Shown here: in pieces, positions 1,910 through 24,831 of the stretch
Position numbering within the stretch: the stretch's first letter is position 1
How the letters are laid out: every line of letters starts with the position of its first letter
Assembly (NCBI GenBank): GCA_900088475.1
Contig: FLMG01004481.1
Span: 1-33,192, forward strand
DNA length: 33,192 nucleotides
Reading direction: 5' to 3'
DNA from: Hyphochytrium catenoides
Taxonomy: Eukaryota; Protista; Hyphochytriomycota
Notes under the pieces: generated by a model
What the model saw: the letters and a program-made list of their open reading frames with translations, nothing else
What the model was told of the DNA's origin: nothing
The model's database searches: none
Made by a program: the position numbers and the translations under genes

Positions 1910-3109
1910 ATGGTTCGCGTCACGTCTATGATAATGCAAGGCCTGCTTATGGCAGGCCTCACACTGCTTGCCACTAAAACCGAAGCCGAGAGCCTCTTTA
2001 CACTGAGAAGGATCACCTCTGCCTCTTCCAACCCATATGAAGGCAAGCAGCAGTACGTCAACCCACGCTTTGTCAAGCACGTAGACAGCTCCATCGCCAA
2101 GGTTCCTGGCAAGGCTGATGTCCTGCGCAAGGTGCAGATTCTTCCTGTGGCCGTATGGCTGGACAACATTGCCGCCACCACGCAGATCAGAAGCTACCTG
2201 GAAGAGGCTAGACGGCAGCAGAACAACGCTGGAAAGCCCGTGGTTGTCACCTTTGTTATTTATGATCTTCCAAACCGCGACTGCGCTGCTGCTGCCTCCA
2301 ATGGAGAGCTTCTGGTCGCACAGAACGGCCTAGCGCGGTACAAGGCAGAGTACATTGATGTCATTGCCAGAGAGTTCGCCGCCTATCCTGACATCTCTAT
2401 AGCAGGCATCGTGGAGCCTGATTCTCTTCCAAACCTGGTAACCAACCTGGCAACGCCTAAGTGTGCAGAGGCTAGCCAAGCTTACAGAGATGGTGTTGTG
2501 TACACGCTGCAGAAGCTTTCTGCTCTTCCCCACGTCACTCTGTACCTTGATGCCGCTCATGAAGGCTGGCTTGGATGGCCAGACAACCGTAGTGCCTTCG
2601 CCAGACTCGTTGCTGACCTGCTTCAGAGGGCAGGAGGTCCACAGGTTATCCGCGGCTTCGCTACTAACGTTGCCAACTATAACAGCATCTCCACCTTTAC
2701 CAACGGACAGCCTGCTTATCCTATTGACTTTAACCCTGCTTGGAACGAGACCTCCTATGTCCAGCTCTTGAAGGAGTCTATGGACGCTGCGGGAATGCCT
2801 AACATGCGGTTCATCGTTGACACAAGTCGCCAGAGAGTCCTCCCTGTAGAGAACAAGAAGCTCCAGGAGTGGTGCAACATCAAGGGCGCTGGGCTGGGCC
2901 TTCGTCCTACGACTAACCCTCATCCGTTGATGGACGCGTACGTCTGGGTGAAGATCCCTGGAGAGAGTGATGGCACTTCAGATAAGAATGCAGCGCGCTT
3001 TGACTTCCACTGCGCCTCAGCAGATAGCTACCAGCCTTCTCCTGAGGCTGGAGAGTGGAACCATGAGTACTTTATGGGACTGGTGGAGAGAGCGACTCCT
3101 CCTCTTTAG
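1910..3109 (+). CDS. Secreted glycoside hydrolase family 6 cellulase (Cel6A-like cellobiohydrolase), single exon, 399 aa, no CBM
   Basis: Uninterrupted ORF with a hydrophobic signal-peptide-like N-terminus (LLMAGLTLLA..TEA). GH6 motifs in order: VIYDLPNRDCAAAASNGE, IVEPDSLPNLVTN (catalytic Asp), YLDAAHEGWLGW, GFATNVANYN, FIVDTSR, WCNIKGAGLG, DAYVWVKIPGESDG, RFDFHC, PEAGEW. Confidence 0.96.
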   Translation: MVRVTSMIMQGLLMAGLTLLATKTEAESLFTLRRITSASSNPYEGKQQYVNPRFVKHVDSSIAKVPGKADVLRKVQILPVAVWLDNIAATTQIRSYLEEARRQQNNAGKPVVVTFVIYDLPNRDCAAAASNGELLVAQNGLARYKAEYIDVIAREFAAYPDISIAGIVEPDSLPNLVTNLATPKCAEASQAYRDGVVYTLQKLSALPHVTLYLDAAHEGWLGWPDNRSAFARLVADLLQRAGGPQVIRGFATNVANYNSISTFTNGQPAYPIDFNPAWNETSYVQLLKESMDAAGMPNMRFIVDTSRQRVLPVENKKLQEWCNIKGAGLGLRPTTNPHPLMDAYVWVKIPGESDGTSDKNAARFDFHCASADSYQPSPEAGEWNHEYFMGLVERATPPL

Positions 3110-8525: not shown

Positions 8526-9223
8526 GAGGAGTTAGACTGTGTACTAAGCGTGTCCTTTCCTCTCTTGCTCGACGTGTCCGGTCGAGATCGTCTCTCTCTC
8601 TCTCTAGCAGTAACTGTTTTCTAAAGACTATTATGTAGACCATGATCCTCCGCCTGTCATTACACGGCTGTAGGGAGGCATAACCCTCTTTTGCATCTCT
8701 CTCTCTCTGCCGGCTCGCTTCTTCTTCTCTCCATGCTTGTGATACACTTGCCGCTTGGTCGTGTCGTCTAAGCGTTCATGCGAAGAAAGTACTCTAAAGA
8801 AGTTGGCACACTTTTGTTCTATCCTCATCTCTGCCGTTATCGACCTGCTTCCTCTCCATCCACGCTATTTAACTCTCTCCTTTTCTCCCATGCGTCCGGT
8901 TTTCCGACCCACAATCGCTACTGAATAGTCATACGCCGGTACGGTCGACCTCCACTTTATTAGCCAGGTTATCATCCTCATGCAGCCGTTAGGACGGCCG
9001 AAAACATGGGTGGATGCCCGCTGAACGATTGCTGATCGGACGCCGAGGGTTCCACGAGGAGGAAGAAGGGCTCTACCGCGGTAGGAGCATTAGAGGGACT
9101 ATTGCGACTTTGCTATAGATTCTTGGCGAGCTAGCTGGGACATGTAGGGGGCAACACGGGCGAAAACGATAAGAGAGAGGAGAAGGAGGGCTGCTGACAC
9201 TCAAGTTACACGGCAATGCAGTC

Positions 9224-10725
9224 CTATCGCACAAGCCATTTGCCTCCAGTTGAGTCTGTGTCTTTGTCCACAGCCTTGAGGTTCTGCACCATTTCGAGAT
9301 ACTTCCTCTGAGCACTGGAGGATAGCTCTTTCTGTCTCTTCGCTTCCTGCTCCTCTTTCTTCTTTTTAGCCGCCTCTTTCTCCTTCTTTTTCTGAAGCGC
9401 GGCAGCTAGTCTCTGTTGCAAGAGATCATTGTGCTTTGGCTGTGAGTCTACCTCCTCCGCCGCCGCCGAGACCGCGGTCTCCCTTTCTCCGTTGCTTCCC
9501 TTCTTGACAGGAAGTTCTGTTGGAGAGGCGTCACCCTCGCGTTTCCTAGATTGTATGGGCCTTCATGGTGAGATAGAGAAGGTACTTCTAGCAGAAGAGC
9601 TCAATAGCAGAAGGAGGTGCACAGAAAGGCAGTCTGTCAATAAAGAGCAGCCTGGGCATGTGAGGATGGAAAGGAAGTAGGAAGCAGGCGTACGGAGATG
9701 GCGAGAGCCATTTAGAAATGATTGAAGTGACGGAGAGCGAGCCATATCCACGCTCTATCGCGCTAGAGGCAAGCGAGAGCCGGCTGGAAGGTATCTGCAC
9801 CTCTTTTGTCCACTATTGGGACTTGATGATCTGTCAGGTCGGCTTGATGACGCCAGACTCGATGCGGGAGGCGCAACCGCGTCCACATTCTTCTTTGGCT
9901 TGTCTAAAGAGGAAGAAGAGGATGCTGACGGTCCCTCCACCCGAGCTGCTTCTCTAGGTGCTACCGGGGTCGCTCCTTGTCGCTGCAGAGCTAAAAACTA
10001 CTCCAAGAACGGTCAGAGACGAAGTCGGTGCAGAGAAGAATGGGGATGGCTAAGTGAAAGGAGAAACTAGTAGAGAGAGAGCGCCTTCCTGATGTTCCGG
10101 GTGAGCGTTCGTATCGGCTGCGTGGTTCTAAAATCTTAAGCTCGAACAACACGGATCCGTAAGAAAGAGGAGGAAGCCAACCTTTGCCATAAAGCTGCCG
10201 TCATTTGAGAAGAGTTCTTGAGCTGGGGCAGGCGGAGCTGGTGGGACTGCTGCTGGTGGTGCGTTAGAGGCCGAAGAAGGAGATGCGGAAGTGTCCCTCG
10301 TGCCAGCGGGAGGAGTGGCAGGCTTCTCACTTTCTGGTCGATTCCACGAGCATTCTCCAGTCTTGATGTTCATGAAATAAACCCGCTAGATAGCAAAGGA
10401 GGAACCGATGGAGACCCATGTCAATAACAGGAACCGATGGAGACGGAGTGGAATGGCAAGCATTGGAGCAAGGGGCAGGCCAAGGGATAAGAAAATTGAT
10501 AGACCCTAGGTATAAATAGCGCCGGAGCGCCAGTTGATAAAGGCTCGGAAGCTCTAAGAGTACGTGTAGAGCGTAAGGCAGGGCGACTTATGCAAGAATG
10601 GAGCTGCCTCAGCCCCATAAAAGGGCAACAGGATCAAAGAATGGAAGCAAACCAAAATTGCGTACCCCATCGCCAGTCCGCCTCTCCTCCCAGCCCGCCT
10701 TTGATGGCTGAGATTTGCCAGCCAT
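9224..10725 (-). CDS. WW-domain protein with TRIR/C19orf43-like motifs, about 260 aa. Exons 10725-10666, 10385-10182, 9997-9801, 9545-9224
   Basis: Splicing reconstitutes a WW domain (GWEERRTGDG|RVYFMNIKTGECSWNRP). Then LFSNDGSFMAK|FL, resembling the FANDGSFLELF motif of TRIR as I recall it, and C-terminal KYLEMVQNLKAVDKDTDSTGGKWLVR, resembling TRIR's KYMAEVKKYK...RPLVK. All three introns are GT-AG with matching phases. Gene model is firmer than the TRIR assignment. Confidence 0.75.
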
Positions 10726-11578
10726 TCCTGCTTCCTAGCTGTACGTCCCACTTTCCAGATGCCGAAGGTCTCAGTTGAGAAGTCTAACTTAAGCTCAGCT
10801 TGTCATACAGCACGTCTAAGGGCCATGTAACGTGCTTTCATCGGCAAGCGGCGGCCAGAAATGGCAATAGTCTCTGTCTTCAGTCTTCAAGGCAGATGCA
10901 GAAGGCACAGAATGTGACAGAGCCAGAGCTTTCCATAGAAATGTAGTGGAAAACTCACCACTATCGAGAGACAGACGGTGAAGTAGATGCGGTATAAATC
11001 TAACGAGATGCGTTTAAGACTCGTTAGGTGCTGTAAAAGGACCAAGTCAGAGATACAAAGACACAAGACAGAGTGACACCAAGTTACTTGGGCACGGGCA
11101 AATTATTGATTATCATGAGGATCTCGCAAGTCCTGATTTAAATCAGAAGCTCCCAAGGGATCAGCTGTCTGTTGTACAGTAATTCCAGATCGTGCATAAG
11201 GACCATAGTATCATAGATAACACAGAATATTTGTAGCCCATCGGGCAGAATTCTGAATGGATGGCGATTCTCAATAGTTGGAGCTCCAAAATCTTCATCT
11301 GCCGCCAATCTTCATCATCATCGGATCTCTCCGAGGACCATCGCCTACAGCTGGATGCAAAGGCACCAGACACGGTCTTATACGCGCCATGCAGGAGGCA
11401 CTTAACAGAGTGAGGGTCTTTCTTCTTCCCTGCGTGTGAACCCCACTCTCTGAGAGGCTGAGCAATGGACGCATGCCTCTGACCATCAAGAACAGCAAGC
11501 CTCGCCTATTCTACTCTTTCGCCTTCCGGAATTAGGGAGTGGACCCTGTGAGAACCGTGACTGCATATAGTACGAAAG
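10726..11578. promoter_or_regulatory. Divergent intergenic region between the WW/TRIR-like gene and NUP107
   Basis: Inferred from head-to-head gene orientation only; no specific promoter element identified. Confidence 0.45.
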
Positions 11579-14500
11579 ATGAGTGGCACAGCGGCTCAAG
11601 GATTCTTCACCTCGCCCTCATCCCCGCCTAGTGGTGGAGAGGATCGATGGAATGTAGAGAGTTTCGATCCAAGCGGTGCCAACACTGGTAAGTACAGCTT
11701 ATCACCCGATCTTGTGACCTTCTATCGTGTAAGACTGCTATATCGGCAGAAGTCTCATGGAGGGCTTGGCCTGGGGAGCGGTCGGACTTGATGTCTCGTG
11801 CAGATCGCGCCCTCCTCTCACTCTCCGCTCTGGCTGACACCGTGCAGACACCCTATGGCATGGGTGCGCGAGGGCCCACCATAGCAAGCGGAAAAGGTGA
11901 TGGAGCCGTACTTTTCTTTCTCTCGTTTTTCCTCTGTTTCCTCAACTGGCATGACTCTCTTACACTTGCCCTGGCCTGCGCAAACATCTTCTCCCCCTCT
12001 CGCTCTCTCGTTGCGCTAACCGTAATGCTCCTTGAATAGAAGAAAATAAGCAGGACGAGCTAGAGCGAACCGAGCAGTATAGCGAGATATCTATAGCAAA
12101 CCGCAACCTCATGCACATTCGCGTCCACCTTCCAAATGGCGCTAGTATCTATGAGGATATTGATCCTAGAACGGACACTGTGGCTGATCTGAAGGCCAGA
12201 GTGTGCAAGCGAGAGAGGTGGCTGAAGGCACCCAGCCAGGTCAAGGGCTTCGACGTTGCTCTTTCGTGTCCAACGCCCTATTTTCTTACTCCATCTTGAC
12301 ATACTCCTTGGCTTGCTCTTGTCTGAATACACTCTCTCTTTCTCTTTGTTTCTTGTCTCTCTCTCGTTCCCTGTGTGTCTCTTCTTTCTCCTGCCCTGTA
12401 ACATCGCCAGCTAATCGTGTGTTATTGAAGTCTTGACTTCTGTATCTATTCCTATCGCCAAACCTTTGGCATTCCTTCGTGTCTCTTCCCCACAGCTGAT
12501 ACTTTTTTTTGCTGTGCCCTGTACCTTATGGTTCACAGCTGCTAGTAGTATACAATGGCCTACCAGTCCAGGATGACTGGCTTGTCTACGACTGCGGGGT
12601 TCAGAAGGATGGCACAGTCCATCTCGTGTTCCGAAGCGCGTGGAGGGGTGGGAAGGGTTACCCAGGAGAGAGAGTTGGTGCAAACAGCAGTTTTTCTCTT
12701 CGAACACCGTCCTTCGATGTCGGTGACGAGTCTCTCGTAGGCCCGGATGTGGGTGCCGCAGGAACCAGTTTCTCTCTCTCTCGTATCTCACTCAACGAAG
12801 GCCCTTCTTTTTATCCGGGAGGAGGGAGAGATGGAGAAGATAGCACTTTCCTAGCGGAGGAGAGACGGTCTTTACTTCCTGAGGCCTCAAACTGGACAGC
12901 TGCAAGCTGGGGCGGGAGAGGTTGGGCGGAAGAGGTTGCCTTTCACGAGATCTTGAAGAAGGAGATGGAGATGGTGTCACAAGAAGGAGGAGGAGAAGCA
13001 GAGGAGAGGCCCATTACGGAGAATCTTCTTTCTTTCTATCAGGAGATTTGTGATAAACAGATCAGTCAACTAAGAGAGGCAGCAACAGGCAAGAAGGCAG
13101 TCAAGAAGCTAAAAGAGCTTGTTCAAGAGAGAAACACATGGGACCTCTTAGCCCGGCTGGAGGATCTTGCCCTTAGACAACAGAAGAGATCTTCCGCCAT
13201 GGAAGAAGAAGAGGAAGAAGAAGTCATGCTTAAAGGGACAGAACAGGATGCTCTTGACCGTCTATTGACTCGAAGCGAGCTTCTGCAACTGTACACCACT
13301 GTCCTTCAATGGCTTGAGAGCATAGCAGCGGAACAGGTCGAGTACAAGGAACTAGGTACGTAATTCTGTTCCTTGTCCGTCCCTCGTCCTTTCACCGTCG
13401 TGAGAGTGCACCTTCTCTCTTCAGGGACTGCACCTCTTGCTTCGATTTATGTGAGTCCTGTTCTTCGTAGTCCTCCTGCTTCCCTCTTGCACACATACTG
13501 CACCTCTGACAATTTTGTATCAACCACAGACATGGACGGTAGCTCCAGTCTCTCGGCTTGGCCTGAGACTTTACGTGTCTTAAAATCCAACAGAGCCAGT
13601 GGAGGAATGATTAAAGCTTTGGATCCTGATGCTCCTACTAGGGATGGTGGACGCCTTGCCCCAGATGATGACGAGAGCGAAGAAGAGCTTCTGAGGACGC
13701 TCTGGTCTTTTCTTAGGGCAGGAGAGGTGCAAAGGGCCATCCTATACTGCAAAGAAAGAGGTCAACACTGGAGGGCAGCCACTCTAGGTGGAGGCAACCC
13801 TTGCGCGGCGCAGATGGGGCTGCACGACGAGAACGGATGTCAGGTGGTGTTCGAAGACCAACCGGAAGATGTTCAGCTCCTCATCTCCCAAGGAGTAGTT
13901 CCTCCTTCCTGTTCTATGCTACTGAAGCGTTGGGGCAACCCTTATCGATTTCTTTGGAAGAGCTTGTGCTGGCGGTTCTCTTTGAGAGGAGCCAAGGAGA
14001 AGCGAGTCACAGGATCCGCTTCTACACTTTCGGAGGAGTACGAGAGACTAATCTACGCCGCCTTATCGTGCAACCTTCGTATTCTACTTTCTTCTCCTCT
14101 ATCTAGCACTTGGGAAGACCACTGTTGGGCGCTCTTTCGCTGCGCACTTGAGAGAAAGCTTGATGAACACCTTTGGAACCATTGGAAGCTTAAGGGCTCG
14201 CTTTCTCTCTTCCGAGCAGGACCCAAGTCTTCGTCGTCTGCTCAAGAGGTCCTAAGAAACACTGAAGATGCCCTACATCTCACTCCAGAGAGTATATTCC
14301 AGCGACTTAGTGACGACGCAAACGAAGAGCTGAGGAAAGAAGGTCAAAGCTTACTTAGAAAGGTACAAGGCGCTCTCATCCAAGGTCAGAGAGAGGAAAT
14401 GATACTTGATATCGTCTATCCAGCCATTGCAACGATAGATCCAGTTCTCTCCGAGGAAGGAGCTCTGGAAAGATCTAGAAAGAGACAGCGACCTGTTGAT

Positions 14501-16167
14501 CATGGCATCTGGGAGCTCTCTCTTGACGAAGAGCGAGAGGAAGTGGGGCTTCTCTCTTCGTCATCTGACTCCGGCTCTCTCACCGCCGGCACACTTCGCT
14601 TCTTGGCGCATCTCTGTCTATATGTCCGACCCCTGCCTGATGGCTCCAACCCTTGCGACGAGGCTGTCTGGCAGGTTGTCAAGGCGTACATTAGACACCT
14701 CGTAAAACAGGGACAGACTGACCTCGTTGCGTTCTATGTGGCTACTCTGCCCTCTCAAGGGAGGGTGCATGTATATTCCCAGGTCTGCGCCCGTATCCTC
14801 TCTTCCTCATCTAGGCAGCGATGTTTAGAGCTAGCCAACGCCTTTTTCACTCCTGACGAGATAGCGCAAATCACAAAGATGGCGGTAGAAGAGGTGCGAC
14901 TGGGCGAGGGAGGAGCGGGAGACAATGCCAGGAGAAAAGAGGAGGACAGGCCACGCCAAGGCATAACGAGAGAGGAAGAGGACATCGCTGTGGATGAAGT
15001 GAAACTTTCTTCCCTCGAGTGGCTCATCGCCTTCCCAGAGCATAGGGAAGAAGCCCTACTGCAAAGCAATCTTCTCATTCGGGATCTCATCCGCGAGGAT
15101 AAACTGTCTTCTGCCATCAAGACTCTTGAGATGCTACCTCCAGACTCATTAGATATAATAAGCGCACACTCCCAAGCCAGGAGAGACAGAGGTCTGGACG
15201 AAGAGAGAGACTCTTTATCTCGTGGAGCCATCAAGGAGCATCTCTGCTGGCAAGCTTATCTCCATGCTACACAGAAATACCTTTCTTGGCACTCTTTCAT
15301 TGCTCTTGCGAAGCAGCGGAGAGGGGGAATGGTGAGAATCGACGACAGGGAACAGGCTGCAGAGTTATTGCGACAGAGTGTTCAGGAGACCGTGACAGCA
15401 ATCAAGGCAGTGCTGGAGTTTGAGAGTGGCTGGTTAGTAGGAGTTGGGCTTGCAGAGCGAGAAGAGGATGACTGGGCGTCAGATTTGAGGAGACTCTGCC
15501 TGCCACCGCTTGTCAACTATCTCCACCAGGTGAGAGCGGTTCAGGCTGTCTTTGGATCCCTTTGTGTCCATTGATGGCTTCTCAATGTGGCTTTTCATAT
15601 CCAGCAGCTCCTTACTCGTAGCGCTTTCACTGCCTCTTTTAGCTTTTTAGCTTCTCACATGCTCTTCATAGCGCTCTTTCTGTCCGTTGCCACTGACTAA
15701 TCCTCCTCTTACTGTCTTAGCCCTTGGGTGTGTATCTATACGTTAGTCGCCGCTGGACCCTTCGCTTTCTTCGTTTATCAACTTCTTCCTTCTTCCATCT
15801 CATTAAACTGGGAGGCAAGACGTTGATCTTTATGTCTTTTTAAGTTCCCCCCTCCTTATCCTTCTCGATTCCCAATGCCGACCCTGTGTGCTGACATCTT
15901 GCTTTGTCACTCTATGCCCTTGGTCCCTATCAGGTCTATGTTGAGAGTGCAACGCTTCTTCTTTCCATAGATTCGTCAAATGCAGTCTTTTGTGAACTCG
16001 CTCTCTCATTCTTCAAAAGTAGCCTGAAGGTCGCGGATCTCGTTGCTTCTTCTCAGTGGAGAATTGACGTGGCAATGGCACCGGAGGAAGTGAGGAAGCT
16101 TTTAGACTCCCTCACAGTCAGCGCAATGGCGCTGTTGCACTTAGAGAACAGCATACAGTTGGCTTAA
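11579..16167 (+). CDS. NUP107: Nuclear pore complex protein Nup107 (Nup84) with an N-terminal ubiquitin-like domain. Exons 11579-11687, 11804-11896, 12040-12239, 12539-13355, 13530-15529, 15934-16167 (about 1150 aa); about 1059 aa if it starts at ATG 12111
   Basis: Nup107 motifs: ERNTWDLL, LDPDAPTR, LLRTLWSFLRAG, CKERGQHWRAATLGG, GNPYRFLWK, YERLIYAAL, TWEDHCWA, LRFLAHLCL, LVAFYVATLP, AIKEHLCWQAYL, LRRLCLP. All intron phases are consistent. The first two exons rest only on splice signals (GTAAGT at 11688, CTAAC branch at 12016, AG at 12038-9) and open frame, so they are less certain. Confidence 0.92.
12111..12652 (+). other. Ubiquitin-like domain (81 aa, split by intron 12240-12538) ending in RGG, in frame with Nup107
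   Basis: MHIRVHLPNGASIYEDIDPRTDTVADLKARVCKRERWLKAPSQ|LLVVYNGLPVQDDWLVYDCGVQKDGTVHLVFRSAWRGG aligns end to end with ubiquitin (MQIFV...DTIENVKAKI...[36 protein letters not shown]). Confidence 0.88.
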
Positions 16168-16946: not shown

Positions 16947-17341
16947 TTTGCTGTTGAAGATGGAAGGATCTGGATCTCAGATCTATTAACTGATAACTAG
17001 AGGTATGATAACCTTGGCTTTTGAAATCTGTATTGTAATTGTCTCTCCCATGTTCGGTGTTGTAGTACTTGATAGTATGCTGGTGGTGGTTGAGCTGTGG
17101 TGTGGCTATGGAAGTATCTTGCCCCTCAAATTCTGCTCCCATTTACATGTCTCCTCTGCTCTTCCTCATCCTAGCACTGAGATACGTATAGAATGATGAT
17201 ATCTCATAATGACTCTGTCTCTCTTGCTCTCCACCATTAATTGTCTCCTGTCTCCTGTCAGTCCCGCTGTCTTCCACTTCCGCCGCTCCAGGCAACCGAA
17301 GTGCTGTACCGCAGCCTCAACCTGTCGCCACGCGTGAGCTG

Positions 17342-17342
<1 letters not shown>

Positions 17343-17409
<67 letters not shown>

Positions 17410-17652
17410 TCATTGTTTCTCTAGGATTGTCCCTCTCAGTGGCCCTTCTCTTTCTCTCTATCACCCTTTTTCTCTGTCTCTACCGTGCTCTTTCTTTCCA
17501 GTGTGTATTCTCTCTCTTCCCTCTCCTGTTCATCTCTCCCTCTCTCTCTTTCTCTCTCTCTCTTTCTCACACTCTCTCTTTCTCTTTCTCTCCTTTTCTC
17601 TCCGCTTCCGCGTTCCTCTCTCACTCGTTTCCCTCTCTCTCTCTCTCCCTCC
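17343..17652. repeat. Long compound (CT)n tract upstream of the BFR1-like gene
   Basis: About 300 bp that is almost entirely pyrimidine, in CT repeats. Confidence 0.92.
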
Positions 17653-18005
17653 CTCACTCCGGGACAGTGGTGCATCTCATCTCTCTCCACTGTTTTCTCT
17701 AAAGCTCAGTCAGACTGAGTCACCTTCGGATCTGAACTGTCTCTACTTTGTCTCTTCTTTTGGGAGAGACAGCGATAGCGTTTTCCTCGCTACGATTGAG
17801 ACAACAGCACAAGGTACGGCTGAGCCTTCACTTATAACGGACGCTAATCTACCGAGAAGAGAGAGAGAGAGAAAGAGAGGACTCTTCGTCTGGCGTTCAG
17901 GTTCGCGCTAAGTGCACCGAGTCTTCACTCTCACTCCGCGTTTCTCTCCTTTTGTCTCCCCCTTTCTGACCTGGTCAAGGACTTGCCCTAGAACATTTAA
18001 GCGTC

Positions 18006-21000
18006 ATGGCGGAGCCAGCAGACCAGCAGCCTGAGGTGGTGGAGGAGACTCCCGTCACCGAGGAGGAAGGTAAACGACAGCAGAAAGGTTCAGGCAGTTA
18101 GACGCCAGCAGCAGGAAGAGCTAACACGCCTCCTCTCACTTTTGATTCGCACAGTCCCTGCAGGGGAGACTCCTCCCGCCATTGACGTCTCGAAGCCTCC
18201 TCAGCGCGTTCCGAAGCCAGACAAGGCAGAGCTAGAGGCTAAGATCAAGGAGGTTGATGATGCGATTGCAGTCCTTGAGGAGAAGAGGGTACATACCTTG
18301 TGTTTGTCCGCGTCAGGCTTTATGAAAAAGTAACGACGCGGTGTTTGGCTATGTTTCTGTAGAGCAAGATCAAGGCTCAGCTTGATGCCAAGCAGGCCAG
18401 CAGACAGGGCGTCCAGGTATAGAATCGCTACAGCGATGACTTGCTTGTCTGATCTACTCCTCTTTCCCTCTCTCCTTCTCTCTCTGTCTCTCTCTCTCTC
18501 TCTTTCCCTTGCCGCTTGCTGCCTTCATTTCTACCCCTGTGATCTACCTTCACCTACGTAAGATATGGGGCTTTTTGTCAATGGGGCCGCTCCATGCTGC
18601 TTTCCCTGGAAACTGTCCCTCTGTATTCGCTTTCGTTCTCTATGAGCCGCTTTTGCTCTTGGTCCTCTCTAAAGATTGTTGCTTCTGACAGTCCTCTTCT
18701 TGATGTCATCTTGTAGGGCCAAGTCCAAGCTGCTCGTGATGAGATGAACCGCCTCAGAGCAGAGTTCAACCGTTTGAGAGAGGAGAGAGCCAAGATCTTT
18801 GCGGAGAGAGATGCGGTCAAGAATGCAATCAACAAGAAGTCTGCCAGCGCCAAGGGAATGAAGAGTGACGTGCGGTTCCACTCTCTCGCCGACATTGAGG
18901 CGGAGATTCGCAGACTGGAGACGAAGCAGAATACTGAGTCCATGTCCATCAACCAGGAGAAGCAGCTTCTCAAGGAGATTGAGTCTCTTAAGCAGTCGAA
19001 GAAGGTGAACTTCATGACGCCCTCTCTTCTCCCAGACATTCCAAGCTTCAGTCGTGTTTCGTAATGGGCCATATGAACTGCTGCTTCTTGGCTTCTCCTC
19101 GTGTCTGTTGGCTCATTATATCACATGCCCAGGTCGTTGCTGCCCTTGCTAGCCAGGAGGAAGCAATCAAGGCTGAAAAGGACAAGTCCAAGGACATCAA
19201 CACTCGCATTGATGAGAAGAACAAGGAGCTAGATGAGGTTAGACTCACCACATCCTCCTCCTACTCTTCCCTCCTCAGCAAGTGCTATCGGGTGTTCCGT
19301 TGTCTATTTCCTTGCCATTGGTCACGTTGCCGCCTGCACCCTATAAGCTATGTGTCTAGTCAGTCTTCGCCAACATCTTCAGACATTGATCTCTGTACAT
19401 GTTTCATGAACCATCTCTCTTGCCGGTGTATAGGTGAATGCTCTTATTGCTGCCCAGAAAAAGATTCTGGAAGAGTTCTCTGCTGCCCAGCCACCAAAGG
19501 AGGAGACGCCTAAGCTAATAGCCGAGAGAGACGCCATCAAGAAGGAGATCGATGCCAAGTATACCGAGAAGAGAGAGCTCAAGAAGGAGTGGAAGGAGAA
19601 GAATGATGAGTATTACAACTATATGCGGGCTCTGAGAGCTTATAAGAATGAGCTCAGGAGACTTGACTATGAGAGGAGAAAGGAGGAAAGAGAGGCCAGG
19701 ATGAGGTTAGTAGGGATATCACGTGGTGGCACAACAGCGAGGCTGTCCGTTTTTCACGTCCTGTCTCATGTGTGCTGCCTCTTGGATCTCCTTCTACTAC
19801 TCTGCGTTCCCACGCTCACTCTTCTTCATTTGTTTAGCTCTTGTCTCATCCCTTGCCGGTTTCTGGACCGTTGCTTCTGCTTCTTGGTTGTTTGCTCTTT
19901 CGTTTGCCGTTAGTTCATGGCCGTCTCTCCTGTTGCCTAGCGCTATGCCGATGAGGCCAATGGAGCTTCTGTTTGTTCTAAACCGACTCAAAGCCTTGCC
20001 TCAATCTTCCCCTCTCCTTCCTGTCCGTTCCAGCAGCTATTGCTAGGCACCCTGAGGTTGTGCTCTCTCTGTCGCCTCATGCTCTCTATCCTCGAGCCGC
20101 GTGCCTTTGCTCCACCACTTCGTCCTCTCCTCACCATTGACATTGCTGTCTCTCTTCTTCTGCTGCTGCGCCTCGCTCGGTATAGGGAGTTCGAGGCGGA
20201 GGAGGCTAAGAAGATCCCTTATGAGGAAGAAATGGCTCTCTGTGACAACCTTGTGTCCTACCTTCAAGCTGCTTTCCTCTCCTCCGAGTCCACCGCTTCG
20301 GACTCCAAGCCAGCTGGCGATAAGAAGCCCGCCATCGCCGGAAAGGTGGAAGAGGGTTGGACCGTGTTGAAGAGAGAGGAAGAGGACTTCATGGTCATGG
20401 GTGGGGCGAAGAAGAAGGGAGGAAAGGTAAGCTGCCTTCTTTCCTAGAAGGAACTCTCTTTCTGTGCTACTCTTCCGTCTTAGTGCCTGTCTGGCTCGCT
20501 CTCTACGTCGTTTTGGCATCCCTCTCTTCGAAGTGACGTTATCAAAGCATCCAAGTAGAGTATGTGGGAATTCTCTAACCTCTCTCTCTTTCTCCGTTTT
20601 GCGTTTGCAGAAGAAGAAGGGAGGGAAGAAAGACGAGAAGTCTGGCACCATCACGCACACGCTGGACATCATTTCTTCCTTCTCTCTCCTTGAGCTCAAT
20701 CCGCCTCCTACCCGCGCGGCCGTGGAGAAGTCTATTGAGGAGCTGAAGAACAAGAAGGAGCACTTCAAGACCTTGCCTCGACCAGAGAAAAAGAAGAAGG
20801 AGGAGGTAGAGGAGAACGCTGCGACCGAGGGAGAGGCACCAAGGTACTATCGCCTTTCCTCGGTCCCTGGATCCTCTAGTGCTTGCACCACCTCGCTTTC
20901 TATGGGCCGTCCTTAGGCATAGGTTTTCTCTATCTTTTCGCTCTTTATAAATCTGTTTGGAAGGCCGATTCCATCTTTCCACTATGCTGTTCTCCTCTTT

Positions 21001-21229
21001 GGTTAATCTCTATCCCTTTCTGTCTCTGCTTCTCGTCTGCAGCTCCCCTAAGAAAGGCAATAACAAGAAAGCCAACAAGAAGAGCTTCAAGCCTGACGAG
21101 GGAGACTTCCCTACTCTTGGAGGAAATGTGGGCACTGCTGCTCCTGCCATTGGCGTCTATGCCAAGCCGTCCGCTGGAGATTATGAGGAAGTTGGAGACG
21201 AGGAGGCTGGTTACGTAGCAGAGGAATAA
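18006..21229 (+). CDS. BFR1 / proton pump-interactor (PPI)-like coiled-coil protein, about 525 aa. Exons 18006-18069, 18155-18288, 18363-18416, 18717-19004, 19133-19237, 19434-19705, 20186-20426, 20611-20843, 21043-21229
   Basis: Nine exons join in frame through GT-AG introns. Long K/E coiled coil with KPDK, IEAEIRRLE...SMSINQEKQLLKEI, PYEEEMALCDNLVSYL and HTLDIISSFSLLELNPP...SIEELKNKKEHF, characteristic of the Bfr1/PPI family. Confidence 0.85.
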
Positions 21230-21380
21230 GAGAGACCACTGGGAAGAGAGTGAGAAAAGGGAACAAAAGGAAAGAAAGGAGAAGAGAGAGAGAGTATAGA
21301 GGTTTGGATAGAGGAAGAACGGGCACACTTACATGCTTCTATCGCAACCCGCGCCACAACTTCCTTTATCCTTCCTCCTG

Positions 21381-21922: not shown

Positions 21923-24831
21923 TTATCGAGGGGCTGGAACCTCCATCGCAAGATACCTGTGAGCCAGCATACTTCTGTCTGCACAGAGAAACTCCGTCCA
22001 GTTCCGGATGAATCCTCTGTCAAAGGGGTTCAGATAGAAGCCGTTTTGATCCTTCATATACTCGTACTTGTCCTTGTTAAATGTCTCGTTCACCGTGATG
22101 TTTCTTGATATGTTGCTCGTCTGGATAATCAGGAGGATGAGCGTCGGGATGCCGAAGATAACGGAGAGAAGGAGAAGCCCTATCTGTGCAGCGATGCGGC
22201 ACTCAGAGAGAGCGCACCACTCTACGAACTCGCTATCAGAAAGAGGAGAGAGGATGGTCTGGCTGAGAAGAGAGCCGTAAAGAGACTGAGATGAAGAGAG
22301 AGGTTTCTCCCGAACGTTCTGAAAGAAAACAGCGATGAGAGAAGATATCATCAGCGCCATCTCCACCACGAAGAGAAAGCAGAAGAAGACAAATTGCCGA
22401 TGATTGAAGAGGCCAACGCAATTGCTGATCCATCTAGTTGAGAGCAGACCGTGAGCAGGATTCCCAAAAGATTATGCGCGCCAGTCCCGAGACGGTAGCA
22501 CAGCGCAGAAGGGAAAGGAGAAGCAGGTCAGTTCTATGTGGGAGCAAGAAGAATATATACAGGGTGGAGACCTCGTCAGGGGCCAAGAGAAGCACACTGC
22601 CAGATTGGCTATGGCAGAGCAGCAGATGGCAGAGGGGAGTCAAAGGGTAGATGCAATAGATAAATGAGCTCAAAGAGGACACTTCCTGTCGTTTGAAGGC
22701 ATCAAGGGCTCTGGAATATAAAGAGAGAAGGTGCAGCATTACTTACGGGCAATGGTGGTCGAAGCGGTGCACACATCGTCCACAGGAGTGACAATGCTTC
22801 ATTCTAGCAGTCTTCTTTATCCTGCAACTCGGACAAGGAAGCGGTCCCTCCTCGGACGCCAATAACTCTTCAAAGACCAACGGATCGCCTTTGGGAATGT
22901 AGCCTGGGCTCGTTAGCCATACCGACGTATAGCTCCCGGCTACCATCAGAGAGAGACACAGGGCTAGAATCTCAACCGTGTTCAAAGAGAGCAAGAGAGT
23001 CCCTTCCAGCACACTAGCGAGGAAAGGCAGCACAAATACAAGCCAGAGAAAGACTCCCAGGGAGAAGAATGAGAAGAAGAAAAGGACTGTTAGTCTCTTC
23101 TCTGAAGCTTCAGCCATCAACCTATCACTTCTGCCGTTCTTCAGAGCCTGCGTTGTGCTCTCAGATCCTGAAGCTTTACTTAAGTCTAGCGCTGTCCTCC
23201 CCAAGCTGTCCCTTATATGCACAGGAGCGCCCTCTAGCACTAACTGTTTGGCGAGAAAAGCATCGCCTAAGGTACAGGCGAGCATCAGCGGTGTCTGACC
23301 CTATGGCAGCAGAGGCAGAAGTGGAGAGAGGAAGATCGTAAGGTAGTGGAGGACAATCGGGAGCAACCGCGTGAAAGGGGATTCATAGAGGGCAAAGAGC
23401 TAAACGGCTGAGTCATTATGGCCTCCGAGAGCAAAGGAGAATGCTGGCAAAGAGTGCGAGGGACACATTGAAAGCAGGATACAGGCAACTAGAAAGTACG
23501 ATGGCGAATCAAGGCTCATAAAAGAGAACTTGCAGCACGGGGATACCTGCCGTACAAGCTCTCTTCCCCCACAGATTTAACCGTCTCTCTCCTCTTCCTC
23601 TCTCTTTCATTTGTCTCTCTCTTCTCTCTCTCTCTTCTCTTTATTGCGATTTTATTTGTGCTGCTAAGCCTACCTGCGCGTCCTGCAATGTCTGATCTGC
23701 CCCTGATGCCACGAGAAGCATGGCAGTGTAATGAAAGCCCTCGAAGACGGCCCAGTGAAGAGGCGTGGCTCCTCTCTTGTCTTGCATGTTGACATCTGCC
23801 CCATAGCGGACAAGGACAGCTATAATGGCTGGGTTATCAGAACTGGAAGCGTAGTGAAGCGGTGTCATGCCAATCGAGTCCGTAGACGAGTGAGACGCTC
23901 CTGCCTGGAGATAGCCAGCGTGATGAGGAATCAGAAAAGAGATGAGTAAACGAAGAGAGAAGGTGGAGAGAGAAAATAAAGGGAACTAAAGGAGAGAGAG
24001 TTAGAAGTAAATAAAGAGAGAGAGAGCGAGGGGAGAGAGAGCCAGAGAGGAAAAGAGAGAGAGAAGAGGAGAGAGAGTCCTCAATGACCGCAGTCAGTCA
24101 AGGTCCAGGTCCAGGGCGAGAGGAGAGGGTAAAAATAAGCTTAGACAAGCGATGAGTTAACATACTTCCAGCAGCAGTCTGCAGAGAGAGAAGGAGGAGC
24201 AGAGCATGAGCGCAGTGGCTGCTCCTTTCCCATAATTAGCCTTCGCTTCCAGAACAGCCTTCAGCTCATCAGAGGACAGAACCTCCTTGGCCAGGGAGAC
24301 TAGATACCGTGCGACACTCTGCTGGTCATAGTAGCACGCTAGCTGCAAACCTAAGAGATAGAGTGGAGTTGAGGGAGAGAAAGAAGNNNNNNNNNNNNNN
24401 NNNNNNNNNNNNNNNNNNNNAAAGAGAGAGAGCAAAAGAGAAACAAGAGGCTTTCACGCCTCACCTGTGAGTGTATCTGTCCCTCTGCTGTGCAGCAGAA
24501 GCTTCAGATTAAGCTTCCGATAGCTTTCTTCCTCTAGCACTCCTCCTACCTCCTCCCCGAGCTTCTCTCTCCTGAGCTCCGTCACCACTGCCTCCACAGA
24601 CTCTCTGTCCCCATACTTGCAGCCTCGAAGGAACTTATCTAGTGAGGCGCTGTACTTTCTTCTGAAGACGGCAAGTTGGACCTCTGTCACGCTAGAGGGA
24701 GAGAGAAGATTCGAGGAGGGAGAGGAGTAAGTGGCAGGAGCAGGAGAGACGGGAGAGAAGGAGTGAAGCAAGGGAGAGGCTTCATCCACTTTCACAGGTT
24801 GACTGCCCTTCCCAGGAGTTGCCGTTCTCAT
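21923..24831 (-). CDS. Ankyrin-repeat DHHC protein S-acyltransferase (Akr1/ZDHHC17/TIP1-like), about 615 aa. Exons 24831-24465, 24350-24166, 23904-23674, 23300-22747, 22433-21923
   Basis: Ankyrin repeats (GMTPLHYA, GATPLHWA, GQTPLMLA, GRTALDL), hydrophobic TM segments, and the DHHC Cys-rich domain CPSCRIKKTARMKHCHSCGRCVHRFDHHCP|WISNCVGLFNHRQF spliced across a phase-2 intron. TTxE-like NITVNE and NPFDRG..RNW motifs follow. Confidence 0.95.

What the first reader, a model, noticed from the sequence alone, without database searches (positions are those of the whole stretch)
12111..12661. Nup107 fused to a ubiquitin-like domain ending RGG|KG: possible DUB-processed nucleoporin precursor
Seen: a complete ubiquitin fold ends ...TVHLVFRSAWRGG at 12652 and continues as KGYPG into Nup107 within the same exon. 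The Ubl-Nup107 junction therefore does not depend on a predicted splice. Known: Sde2 (GG|KGG) and FAU (GG|KVH) are Ubl-fusion precursors cut after the diglycine to expose an N-terminal Lys. Canonical human, yeast and plant Nup107/Nup84 have no Ubl, and Nup98/96 use a different autoprotease. Inference: mature Nup107 may be released by a deubiquitinase and start with Lys, an N-degron residue, linking Y-complex assembly to processing or turnover. The released Ubl-GG could also be a new conjugatable modifier. The tail is two residues longer than ubiquitin's (FRSAWRGG vs LRLRGG), hinting at a dedicated protease or an uncleaved domain.
Basis: partly seen in the sequence, partly recalled or inferred. 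Interest (0 to 1): 0.85.

Follow-up and report, generated by a model that had tools for sequence, protein, structure and literature searches.

The report
Ubiquitin-like domain built into Nup107
This protist's nuclear-pore scaffold protein Nup107 carries a real ubiquitin-like domain that all water moulds (oomycetes) share and no paper I found describes, but only this genome keeps the "RGG" end, so the domain is more likely a permanent part of the protein than a piece that gets cut off.

Summary
On the + strand, 12111-12239 and 12539-12652, joined across a 299-nt GT..AG intron, encode an 81-aa segment. It aligns end to end with ubiquitin (26/76 identical) and ends RGG at 12652. The same exon runs on through KGYPGER and a Gly/Ser/Glu-rich linker into Nup107 (PF04121, E 8.7e-106).

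Two points change the picture. First, the domain is internal. My six-exon, 1168-aa model puts it at residues 110-190, behind a short helix motif that the whole family shares. Second, the helix-Ubl-linker-Nup107 layout occurs in every oomycete order sampled and in three unnamed lineages, two of them read here as intronless genes. None of 16 orthologues has GG at this position: 12 have no GG within 22 residues and 4 have it 11-15 residues out.

The tail here is two residues longer than ubiquitin's and has Ala where ubiquitin has Arg72.

Best reading (0.65): a permanent Ubl docking module on a flexible Nup107 arm, with RGG a relic of its ubiquitin ancestor. Cleavage in this lineage stays possible (about 0.2).

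No RNA run was listed, so the splices rest on comparison alone. I found no paper describing this architecture. Other notes of this scan report ubiquitin-fusion genes elsewhere in this genome; I did not test them.

The parts
11579..11687 (+). Tentative exon 1 (ATG; MSGTAAQGFFTSPSSPP...SGANT; donor GTAAGT at 11688; ends in phase 1)
   Evidence: ORF and splice signals. It is phase-compatible with the next exon and the full model has no internal stop. There is no family similarity and no RNA. An alternative start at ATG 11791 inside exon 2 is equally possible.
11750..11896 (+). Exon 2 (147 nt, phase 1 at both ends), carrying the family's N-terminal helix motif
   Evidence: Acceptor cag at 11747-11749 and donor gtgatg at 11897.
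11782..11838 (+). Conserved N-terminal helix motif SDLMSRADRALLSLSALAD (oomycetes: QRLIDSADQSLSLLASLGD)
   Evidence: It was the only regex hit in 9001-12240 in the three + strand frames. It aligns with the motif in all family members. AF2 predicts a helix in the Achlya orthologue, residues 3-24, pLDDT 68-79.
12040..12239 (+). Exon 3: acidic pre-Ubl segment (12040-12110) and the N-terminal half of the Ubl (12111-12239; beta1-beta2-alpha1)
   Evidence: Acceptor ag at 12038-12039 and donor gtcaag at 12240. It aligns with LLEPVV..SV..GLLHVKGVFPDQS.E.VDVDPR.TT..DLK..LC..R of oomycetes.
12240..12538 (+). Predicted 299-nt intron that splits the Ubl (phase 0, GT..AG, pyrimidine-rich 3' end; in-frame stop at 12297-12299 if retained)
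   Evidence: Splicing gives a continuous alignment to ubiquitin across the junction (Q43|L44) and to the family. There is no transcript evidence.
12539..12652 (+). C-terminal half of the Ubl (beta3-beta4-3/10-beta5) and tail FRSAWRGG; protein residues 153-190
   Evidence: The Pfam ubiquitin match to profile positions 41-70 is below cutoff. The family profile hits ubiquitin and parkin Ubl in the PDB.
12653..13111 (+). Lys191 and a Gly/Ser/Glu-rich, probably disordered linker (KGYPGER...), holding further GG/RGG-like runs and a SISSI-like motif
   Evidence: Composition is G 12.9%, E 12.9%, S 12.1%. The equivalent tails in the AF2 models of orthologues have low pLDDT, under 50 in P0001 and 54-62 in P0043.
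13112..13355 (+). Start of the Nup107 helical domain, in the same exon as the Ubl C-half; donor gtacgt at 13356
   Evidence: PF04121 profile positions 2-75, E 1e-07.
13530..15529 (+). Exon 5: main body of Nup107/Nup84
   Evidence: PF04121 E 8.7e-106, profile positions 89-667. It is 27-31% identical to oomycete Nup107. Acceptor cag at 13527-13529 and donor gtgaga at 15530.
15934..16167 (+). Exon 6: C-terminal helices and the TAA stop (16165-16167)
   Evidence: Acceptor cag at 15931-15933. The sequence VYVESATLLL...VADLVASS parallels oomycete IQLESAK...VADVVADE. The six exons total 3507 nt and encode 1168 aa with one terminal stop.

Best explanation
The gene encodes a Nup107/Nup84 scaffold nucleoporin. 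Its N-terminal arm has a fixed layout: a short amphipathic helix, an acidic spacer, a ubiquitin-like beta-grasp domain, a disordered linker, then the alpha-solenoid.

The Ubl derives from a whole ubiquitin unit (Met1 to Gly76) that entered Nup107 before this lineage, the oomycetes and at least one further unnamed lineage diverged. In most or all of these organisms it is an integral domain that is not removed. I infer that it works as a permanent ubiquitin-like handle on a flexible tether at the outer ring of the pore. That handle would recruit a ubiquitin/Ubl-binding partner, such as a proteasome receptor or a DUB/SUMO-protease-type factor.

The RGG followed by Lys in this genome is most simply a relic of ubiquitin's C-terminus. 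It survives in the slowest-evolving copy and has been made a poor DUB substrate by a two-residue insertion and loss of the Arg72 equivalent.

Shown: domain identity, fold at family level, architecture, conservation pattern. Inferred: no cleavage here, and the docking function.
For: - Nup107 identity: PF04121 E 8.7e-106.
- Ubl by sequence: end-to-end alignment to ubiquitin, 26/76 identical. The family profile hits di-ubiquitin and parkin Ubl in the PDB at about 1e-5.
- Ubl by fold: AF2 models of two orthologues give beta-beta-alpha-beta-beta-3/10-beta, with pLDDT about 90 over the Achlya domain. The best Foldseek matches are SUMO, ubiquitin and parkin Ubl, TM by target 0.76-0.85.
- Family-wide architecture: an exhaustive profile search of 1.84 billion proteins found single N-terminal matches only in Nup107-type proteins of Phytophthora, Peronospora, Peronosclerospora, Pythium, Globisporangium, Albugo, Achlya and Aphanomyces, plus three unnamed lineages. 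All other listed hits had two or more matched stretches, as polyubiquitin-type repeats do; those I read were polyubiquitin.
- Two orthologues are single uninterrupted ORFs, so the fusion is not a splice-prediction artefact.
- The N-helix motif and the pre-Ubl segment are present in-frame upstream in the window.
- GG is absent or displaced in all 16 orthologues.
- The window's copy is by far the most ubiquitin-like (BLOSUM62 local score 100 against 25-57), which fits a retained relic.
- Positions equivalent to ubiquitin's hydrophobic patch stay hydrophobic or His across the family: I44 becomes V/M/F/I/Y, H68 becomes H/Y/Q, V70 becomes V/I/L/T/F.
- The SDE2 study shows that the Arg72-equivalent and the GG are essential for USP5 cleavage (PMC13572447). 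Here that position, five residues before the cut, is Ala.
- Proteasomes are known to tether at nuclear pores (PMC5748218). This is context only.
Against: - This genome alone keeps a hydrophobic-Arg-Gly-Gly tail close to ubiquitin's register (GG starts 7 residues after the beta5 core; ubiquitin 5). It also keeps Met at the ubiquitin Met1 position. That could reflect continued recognition by ubiquitin-processing enzymes rather than slow drift.
- Divergent Ubls such as Sde2 and FUBI are cleaved.
- From memory, the last five residues (AWRGG) resemble NEDD8's ALRGG, and SUMO's tail is only one residue shorter than this one.
- There is no protein or RNA evidence either way.
- The window's own Ubl was not modelled, because it is split by an intron and I did not type sequences.
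- The docking-module function and its partner are pure inference.
Confidence: 0.65

Rival explanations
1. Lineage-specific processing. In this organism a deubiquitinase or Ubl-specific protease cuts after Gly190. That releases a 190-aa helix-Ubl-GG fragment and a Nup107 that starts with Lys191.
For: The RGG|KG lies directly at the end of an end-to-end ubiquitin-like domain. The P4 Trp (hydrophobic), P3 Arg and P2-P1 Gly-Gly mirror ubiquitin's L73-R74-G75-G76. The ubiquitin hydrophobic-patch equivalents are kept (V47, H71, V73 in Ubl numbering). Sde2 and FUBI are precedents with Lys after GG (PMC13572447, PMC8354635). Other notes of this scan report ubiquitin-fusion genes in the same genome; these are untested leads.
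Against: No orthologue conserves the GG, whereas processed Ubl fusions conserve it. The tail is two residues longer than ubiquitin's, and P5 is Ala instead of the Arg72 equivalent, which is essential for SDE2 cleavage. Cleavage would detach the family-conserved N-helix, which in the GG-less orthologues necessarily stays attached to Nup107. The linker is Gly-rich, with further GG/GGR/GRG runs, and chance alone gives about 8% for a GG near this offset.
Confidence: 0.2
2. Gene-model artefact. The Ubl-coding exons are not part of the Nup107 mRNA: transcripts start or splice in downstream of 12652, or the 12240-12538 intron is retained and truncates the product.
For: No RNA run was listed and only DNA runs could be laid. 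The donor gtcaag at 12240 is weaker than the gene's other donors. The intron holds an in-frame stop.
Against: The Ubl C-half and the Nup107 start share one exon with no stop between them. All six exons join in frame to a 1168-aa protein. That protein is collinear, element by element, with orthologues of about 875-1120 aa. Two orthologous genes are intronless ORFs with the same layout.
Confidence: 0.05
3. The RGG is neither a cleavage site nor a ubiquitin relic. It is simply one of several RGG/RG-type glycine-arginine motifs of a disordered linker, for example for arginine methylation or RNA or karyopherin contacts, and it happens to abut the Ubl.
For: The linker holds GGGR (246-249), WGGRGW (276-281) and GGG (302-304), with 12.9% Gly. 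Shuffling gives about 8% for a GG at this offset.
Against: The match extends beyond GG to the hydrophobic-Arg-Gly-Gly pattern. It sits at the end of a domain that aligns with ubiquitin from Met1 onward. MAFFT also aligns it with the R(xx)GG of some Phytophthora tails.
Confidence: 0.1

Closest known systems
Canonical Nup107 (human) / Nup84 (yeast), Y-complex scaffold nucleoporins, Pfam PF04121
   Same: Full-length match to the Nup84_Nup100 profile, positions 2-75 and 89-667 of 717, with the invariant WRAA.L.GG and RWGNP.R.LWK blocks.
   Different: It carries a helix-Ubl-linker arm of about 330 residues in front of the solenoid. Two non-Ubl Nup107s seen here have no such domain: a metagenomic one, whose N-terminus I read, and one from Mortierella, which is only 797 aa with PF04121 as its sole precomputed domain.
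Oomycete 'Nuclear pore complex protein' entries (e.g. Phytophthora infestans, Albugo laibachii F0WN26, Aphanomyces astaci W4FLV3)
   Same: Same order of elements (N-helix, Ubl, Ser-rich linker, RPEE motif, Nup107). The Ubl is 31-39% identical and the solenoid 27-31% identical.
   Different: They lack GG at the end of the Ubl. Their Ubl is much less ubiquitin-like. The two orthologous genes read here are intronless, whereas this gene has five introns. Their Ubl is not annotated, because the Pfam ubiquitin match stays below cutoff.
Sde2/SDE2 (Ubl-GG|KGG precursor cut by Ubp5/Ubp15 or USP5)
   Same: A divergent Ubl followed by GG, then Lys-Gly.
   Different: In SDE2 the Ubl is N-terminal, the GGKGG motif is the most conserved part of the protein, and the tail has ubiquitin's register with the essential Arg73. 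Here the Ubl is internal, GG is unique to one lineage, the tail is 2 residues longer and P5 is Ala.
FUBI-eS30 (FAU) and ubiquitin-ribosomal protein fusions (UBA52, RPS27A)
   Same: A ubiquitin-type domain encoded in frame ahead of a structural protein of a large assembly. FUBI also has GG|K (PMC8354635).
   Different: Those Ubls start the polypeptide, and their removal is obligatory and conserved. That is not seen here.
Integral Ubl-domain proteins (Rad23, Dsk2/ubiquilin, parkin, BAG family, Esc2/Rad60 SUMO-like domains)
   Same: A beta-grasp Ubl kept inside a larger protein with no conserved GG. The profile's best single-domain PDB hit is parkin Ubl. Rad23, ubiquilin, BAG4 and Esc2 appear among the structural or profile matches.
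   Different: None of these is a nucleoporin. The partner of this Ubl is unknown.
Nup98-Nup96 precursor
   Same: A nucleoporin made as a longer precursor.
   Different: Nup98-Nup96 uses an autoproteolytic domain of its own fold (established knowledge). No such domain is present here; only the ubiquitin-family and PF04121 matches were found.

Membership tests
Nup107/Nup84 (PF04121) | Significant full-length match to the Nup84_Nup100 profile | tested here: met
   E 8.7e-106, 355 bits against a cutoff of 22.5, profile positions 89-667. A further match, E 1e-07, covers positions 2-75 in the preceding exon.
Nup107/Nup84 (PF04121) | Groups with recognised Nup107 orthologues | tested here: met
   The best database hits are oomycete Nup107 proteins, E 6e-73. 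In an ML tree the window sits with the Ubl-bearing Nup107s (support 86/97), outside the oomycete clade. Branches are long and only two outgroups were used.
Ubiquitin-like beta-grasp domain | Sequence similarity to ubiquitin-family domains | tested here: met
   26/76 identities end to end. The family profile against PDB gives parkin Ubl 1.2e-05 and di-ubiquitin 2.5e-05. Pfam PF00240 alone is below cutoff, 12-17 bits against 25.4.
Ubiquitin-like beta-grasp domain | beta-beta-alpha-beta-beta-(3/10)-beta fold | tested here: met
   AF2 models of two orthologues (P0001 with mean pLDDT 69; P0043 with domain pLDDT about 90) and Foldseek TM by target of 0.76-0.85 to SUMO1, ubiquitin and parkin Ubl. The window's own segment was not modelled; it inherits the fold by homology.
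Cleaved Ub/Ubl-fusion precursors (UBA52, RPS27A, FAU, Sde2) | Gly-Gly at the C-terminal end of the Ubl, followed directly by the mature protein | tested here: met
   RGG at 12644-12652, then Lys.
Cleaved Ub/Ubl-fusion precursors (UBA52, RPS27A, FAU, Sde2) | The GG cleavage motif is conserved among orthologues | tested here: not met
   None of 16 orthologues has GG at this offset. Twelve have none within 22 residues.
Cleaved Ub/Ubl-fusion precursors (UBA52, RPS27A, FAU, Sde2) | Ubiquitin-register tail with Arg at P5 and a hydrophobic residue at P4 | tested here: not met
   The tail is 2 residues longer than ubiquitin's. P5 is Ala and P4 is Trp. The Arg72-equivalent is essential in SDE2.
Cleaved Ub/Ubl-fusion precursors (UBA52, RPS27A, FAU, Sde2) | The Ubl forms the N-terminus of the precursor | tested here: not met
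   Conserved in-frame coding sequence and a family N-helix lie upstream, so the Ubl is residues 110-190 of the model. Polyubiquitin shows that internal units can still be cut, so this point is weaker than the others.
Cleaved Ub/Ubl-fusion precursors (UBA52, RPS27A, FAU, Sde2) | Demonstrated endoproteolytic release | not testable with these tools
   This needs protein-level data.
Integral (type-2) Ubl-domain proteins | The Ubl fold is retained within a larger protein across orthologues without a conserved GG | tested here: met
Integral (type-2) Ubl-domain proteins | The Ubl binds a ubiquitin/Ubl receptor | not testable with these tools
   Only the retention of hydrophobic-patch positions was seen.

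The most novel reading that the evidence does not exclude
The family began as a true ubiquitin-fusion nucleoporin. This deep-branching relative of the oomycetes still processes it. A protease cuts after Gly190 and yields Lys191-Nup107, whose N-terminal Lys could couple the stability of unassembled Nup107 to the N-degron pathway. It also yields a helix-Ubl-GG fragment that might be conjugatable. The oomycetes later froze the domain in place by losing the GG.
Probability: 0.2. Interest if true: 0.8.

Novelty: new variant of a known kind. Interest (0 to 1): 0.5.

Why it matters
The outer-ring Y-complex is usually regarded as one of the most conserved parts of the nuclear pore. A ubiquitin-derived domain fixed in one of its core members across a whole eukaryotic group is a clear lineage-specific addition. 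That group includes Phytophthora, downy mildews, Albugo, Aphanomyces and Pythium insidiosum.

The domain escapes standard annotation, because the Pfam ubiquitin match stays below cutoff. I found no paper on it in three searches.

It offers a concrete, testable link between the pore scaffold and the ubiquitin/SUMO/proteasome machinery. This genome holds the least-diverged copy, which still looks like ubiquitin from Met1 to Gly76. That makes it the best place to ask whether the fusion started as a cleaved precursor.

Tried and rejected
- **RNA evidence.** The RNA-run search listed none. The 'any' search gave three DNA runs and three tiny unrelated ones. Laying them showed even coverage of introns and no joints, so they say nothing about splicing.
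- **Metagenome scan with a Nup107 alignment.** It returned one locus, an ordinary Nup107 without a Ubl. It served only as a comparator.
- **Two protein searches that led nowhere.** The profile A2 returned only a Mortierella Nup107. The region-restricted query returned nothing. I could therefore not check ochrophyte or labyrinthulid Nup107s directly. Absence of the Ubl there is not shown.
- **ESM Atlas search.** It confirmed only the Nup107 family.
- **Alternative donor at 12255** (GFD|gttgct, adding VKGFD). I rejected it because the signal is poor and the fit to ubiquitin is no better.
- **Alternative short intron 13356-13424.** I rejected it in favour of 13356-13529, which matches the spacing in the oomycete alignment.
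- **UIM reading of the N-helix.** I considered it and dropped it. The spacing is A-x-x-S, not A-x-x-x-S (from memory of the UIM consensus).
- **Model of the window's own Ubl.** I did not run it. The segment is split by an intron and has no single reference, and I did not type it in.
- **Relative position of N-helix and Ubl.** The AF2 model of N-helix plus Ubl gave a low pTM (0.47), so nothing can be said about whether the helix docks on the Ubl.
Full report
**What is in the sequence.**

The + strand between 11.5 and 16.2 kb carries a spliced eukaryotic gene. Pfam places its body firmly in the Nup84/Nup107 family. The large exon matches profile positions 89-667 of 717 at E 8.7e-106. The last 75 codons of the preceding exon match positions 2-75 at E 1e-07.

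That preceding exon (12539-13355) opens with LLVVYNGLPVQDDWLVYDCGVQKDGTVHLVFRSAWRGG. The Gly-Gly codons lie at 12647-12652, and the exon runs on as KGYPGER without a stop. The exon before it ends ...MHIRVHLPNGASIYEDIDPRTDTVADLKARVCKRERWLKAPSQ at 12239.

Joining 12239 to 12539 removes a 299-nt GT..AG intron in phase 0. The result is an 81-aa segment that aligns with ubiquitin from Met1 to Gly76, with 26 identities. The only gaps are two residues in the alpha1-beta3 loop, one after Pro19, and two in the tail.

**Transcript evidence.**

None could be obtained. No RNA run was listed. The three runs that hold the locus are genomic: depth is even across exons and introns and there are no joints. All splice junctions below rest on signals, reading frame and comparison with relatives.

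**Gene model.**

Six exons join in frame:

| Exon | Coordinates |
|---|---|
| 1 | 11579-11687 |
| 2 | 11750-11896 |
| 3 | 12040-12239 |
| 4 | 12539-13355 |
| 5 | 13530-15529 |
| 6 | 15934-16167 |

Together they make 3507 nt and encode 1168 aa with a single terminal stop. The Ubl is residues 110-190 and the Lys after GG is residue 191.

Exon 1 is tentative. It has no family similarity, and an alternative start at ATG 11791 is possible.

Exon 2 is well supported. It holds SDLMSRADRALLSLSALAD, the counterpart of QRLIDSADQSLSLLASLGD found near the N-terminus of every relative. It was the only hit to that pattern in 9001-12240 in the three + strand frames. The 24 codons of exon 3 that precede Met110 also align with the relatives' pre-Ubl segment.

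So ATG 12111 is an internal Met that corresponds to ubiquitin's Met1. It is not the start of the protein.

**Relatives.**

The closest database proteins are oomycete 'nuclear pore complex proteins' of about 1030-1110 aa, roughly 30% identical over the solenoid. Reading them showed the same segment in front of Nup107. It aligns with the window's two half-domains and is 31-39% identical to the spliced window Ubl.

I then searched a profile of this segment exhaustively against 1.84 billion representative proteins. Single, near-full-length matches came only from the N-terminal part of eight proteins. All other listed hits had two or more matched stretches, as polyubiquitin-type repeats do, and those I read were polyubiquitin. 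Four of the eight that I read in full carry the Nup107 sequence blocks, two of them with PF04121 on record.

Source names place the family in these orders:
- Peronosporales: Phytophthora, Peronospora, Peronosclerospora.
- Pythiales: Pythium insidiosum, Globisporangium.
- Albuginales: Albugo laibachii.
- Saprolegniales: Achlya, Aphanomyces.

Three more come from unnamed sources. Two of those genes are single uninterrupted ORFs that encode helix, Ubl and Nup107 together. The fusion is therefore not a product of splice prediction.

In an ML tree of the solenoid, the Ubl-bearing proteins group together against two Ubl-less Nup107s. The window lies outside the oomycete clade, unresolved against the two unnamed lineages. 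Branches are long and outgroups few, so this is only indicative.

**Fold.**

- The family profile finds parkin Ubl (1.2e-05) and di-ubiquitin (2.5e-05) among PDB sequences.
- AF2 models of two orthologues give the beta-grasp order of elements. pLDDT is about 90 across the Achlya domain, and the tail after beta5 is disordered.
- Foldseek's best matches are SUMO1, ubiquitin and parkin Ubl, with TM by target of 0.76-0.85.
- The Pfam ubiquitin model stays below its cutoff in every member, and the precomputed Pfam annotation of these proteins lists only PF04121. This explains why the domain has gone unannotated.

**Is it a cleaved precursor?**

*Arguments against:*
- Conservation. In 16 orthologues with an alignable beta5, 12 have no GG within 22 residues. 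Four (Peronospora belbahrii and three Phytophthora species) have RGG or PGG 11-15 residues away. None has it at the window's offset of 7; ubiquitin's is 5. Processed Ubl fusions keep the motif: in SDE2 the GGKGG is the best-conserved part of the protein (PMC13572447).
- Tail chemistry. The same paper shows that mutating the diglycine impairs USP5 cleavage. L70A and R73A, the counterparts of ubiquitin L69 and R72, abolish it. In the window the residue five positions before the cut is Ala, and the fold-equivalent Arg sits two residues further back.
- The N-helix. Cleavage would separate the family-conserved N-helix from Nup107. In the GG-less relatives the helix necessarily stays attached.
- Composition. 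The linker is glycine-rich and has further GG, GGR and GRG runs. Composition alone gives about 8% for a GG at this distance.

*Arguments for:*
- The window's copy is far more ubiquitin-like than any other, with a BLOSUM62 score of 100 against 25-57. It alone aligns from Met1 to Gly76.
- Trp-Arg-Gly-Gly mirrors ubiquitin's Leu-Arg-Gly-Gly.
- The hydrophobic-patch equivalents are kept.
- Divergent Ubls such as Sde2 and FUBI are cleaved.

**Reading.**

I read the RGG as a relic of the ubiquitin unit from which the domain arose. It is preserved in the slowest-evolving lineage. I take the domain to be integral (0.65). Cleavage in this lineage remains a live minority possibility (0.2).

**How it probably works (inferred).**

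The arm is a helix, a spacer, the Ubl and about 140 residues of disordered linker in front of the solenoid. Nup107's N-terminal region projects from the Y-complex (established knowledge of Y-complex structure). A Ubl on such a tether resembles the integral Ubl domains of Rad23, ubiquilin, parkin or the SUMO-like domains of Esc2, which recruit receptors rather than being conjugated.

Hydrophobic or His residues persist across the family at the positions of ubiquitin I44, H68 and V70. That fits binding to a ubiquitin-binding module.

Proteasomes are known to be tethered at pores by unidentified tethers (PMC5748218). That is one candidate partner. SUMO or ubiquitin proteases at the pore are another. 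Nothing here tests this.

**Novelty.**

Three literature searches found no description of a Ubl in Nup107/Nup84 in any organism. The library does not cover all journals. The finding is best described as a lineage-wide variant architecture of a known nucleoporin, first seen here through its least-diverged copy. It is not a new processing system.

Other notes of this scan report ubiquitin-fusion genes (SF3A2, DRC2) elsewhere in this genome and call the organism a close relative of oomycetes. I did not test the former. The tree agrees loosely with the latter.

Noticed in passing
window 1910-3109 (+): An intact 399-aa ORF is a glycoside hydrolase family 6 (cellulase/cellobiohydrolase) protein, Pfam E 6e-104.
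   Followed up: partly
window 21926-23285 (-): Two minus-strand ORF pieces match the two halves of the DHHC palmitoyltransferase profile (E 3e-05 and 1.2e-09). They are probably exons of one zDHHC gene.
   Followed up: partly
window 17160-17720: A long CT/GA-rich low-complexity tract lies just downstream of the Nup107 gene. It gives SLSLSL and RERERE pseudo-ORFs on both strands, with a strong negative GC and AT skew at 17001-18000.
   Followed up: no
window 11492-15960 (e.g. 12127 A>G, 12229 C>G, 12999 C>T, 13079 G>A): The DNA runs carry many single-base differences from the window across this gene, either heterozygosity or strain differences. By my reading of the codons, two fall in the Ubl N-half (His115Arg, Ala149Gly) and none in the RGG tail.
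   Followed up: partly
window 11989-12349: One contig of run X2 joins 12349 back to 11989 with 13 other letters between, and loose ends sit at 12009 and 12332. This is probably an assembly break in the CT-rich intron sequence rather than a rearrangement.
   Followed up: no
window 18142-21300 (+): A run of + strand ORF pieces is rich in Lys/Glu coiled-coil sequence (MNRLRAEFNRLREERAKIF......EKRELKKEWKEKNDEYYNYMRALRAYKNELRRLDYERRKEE). It has no Pfam match and looks like a multi-exon coiled-coil gene next to Nup107.
   Followed up: no
oomycete orthologues, 11-20 residues after the Ubl (e.g. P0004, P0006, P0008, P0012): A loosely conserved GLF.G[RK] / SLFGA motif, reminiscent of a single degenerate FG/GLFG nucleoporin motif, follows the Ubl in many oomycete Nup107s. 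A SISSI.S.Y motif follows further on. The window has FSLSRISL at the latter place.
   Followed up: no
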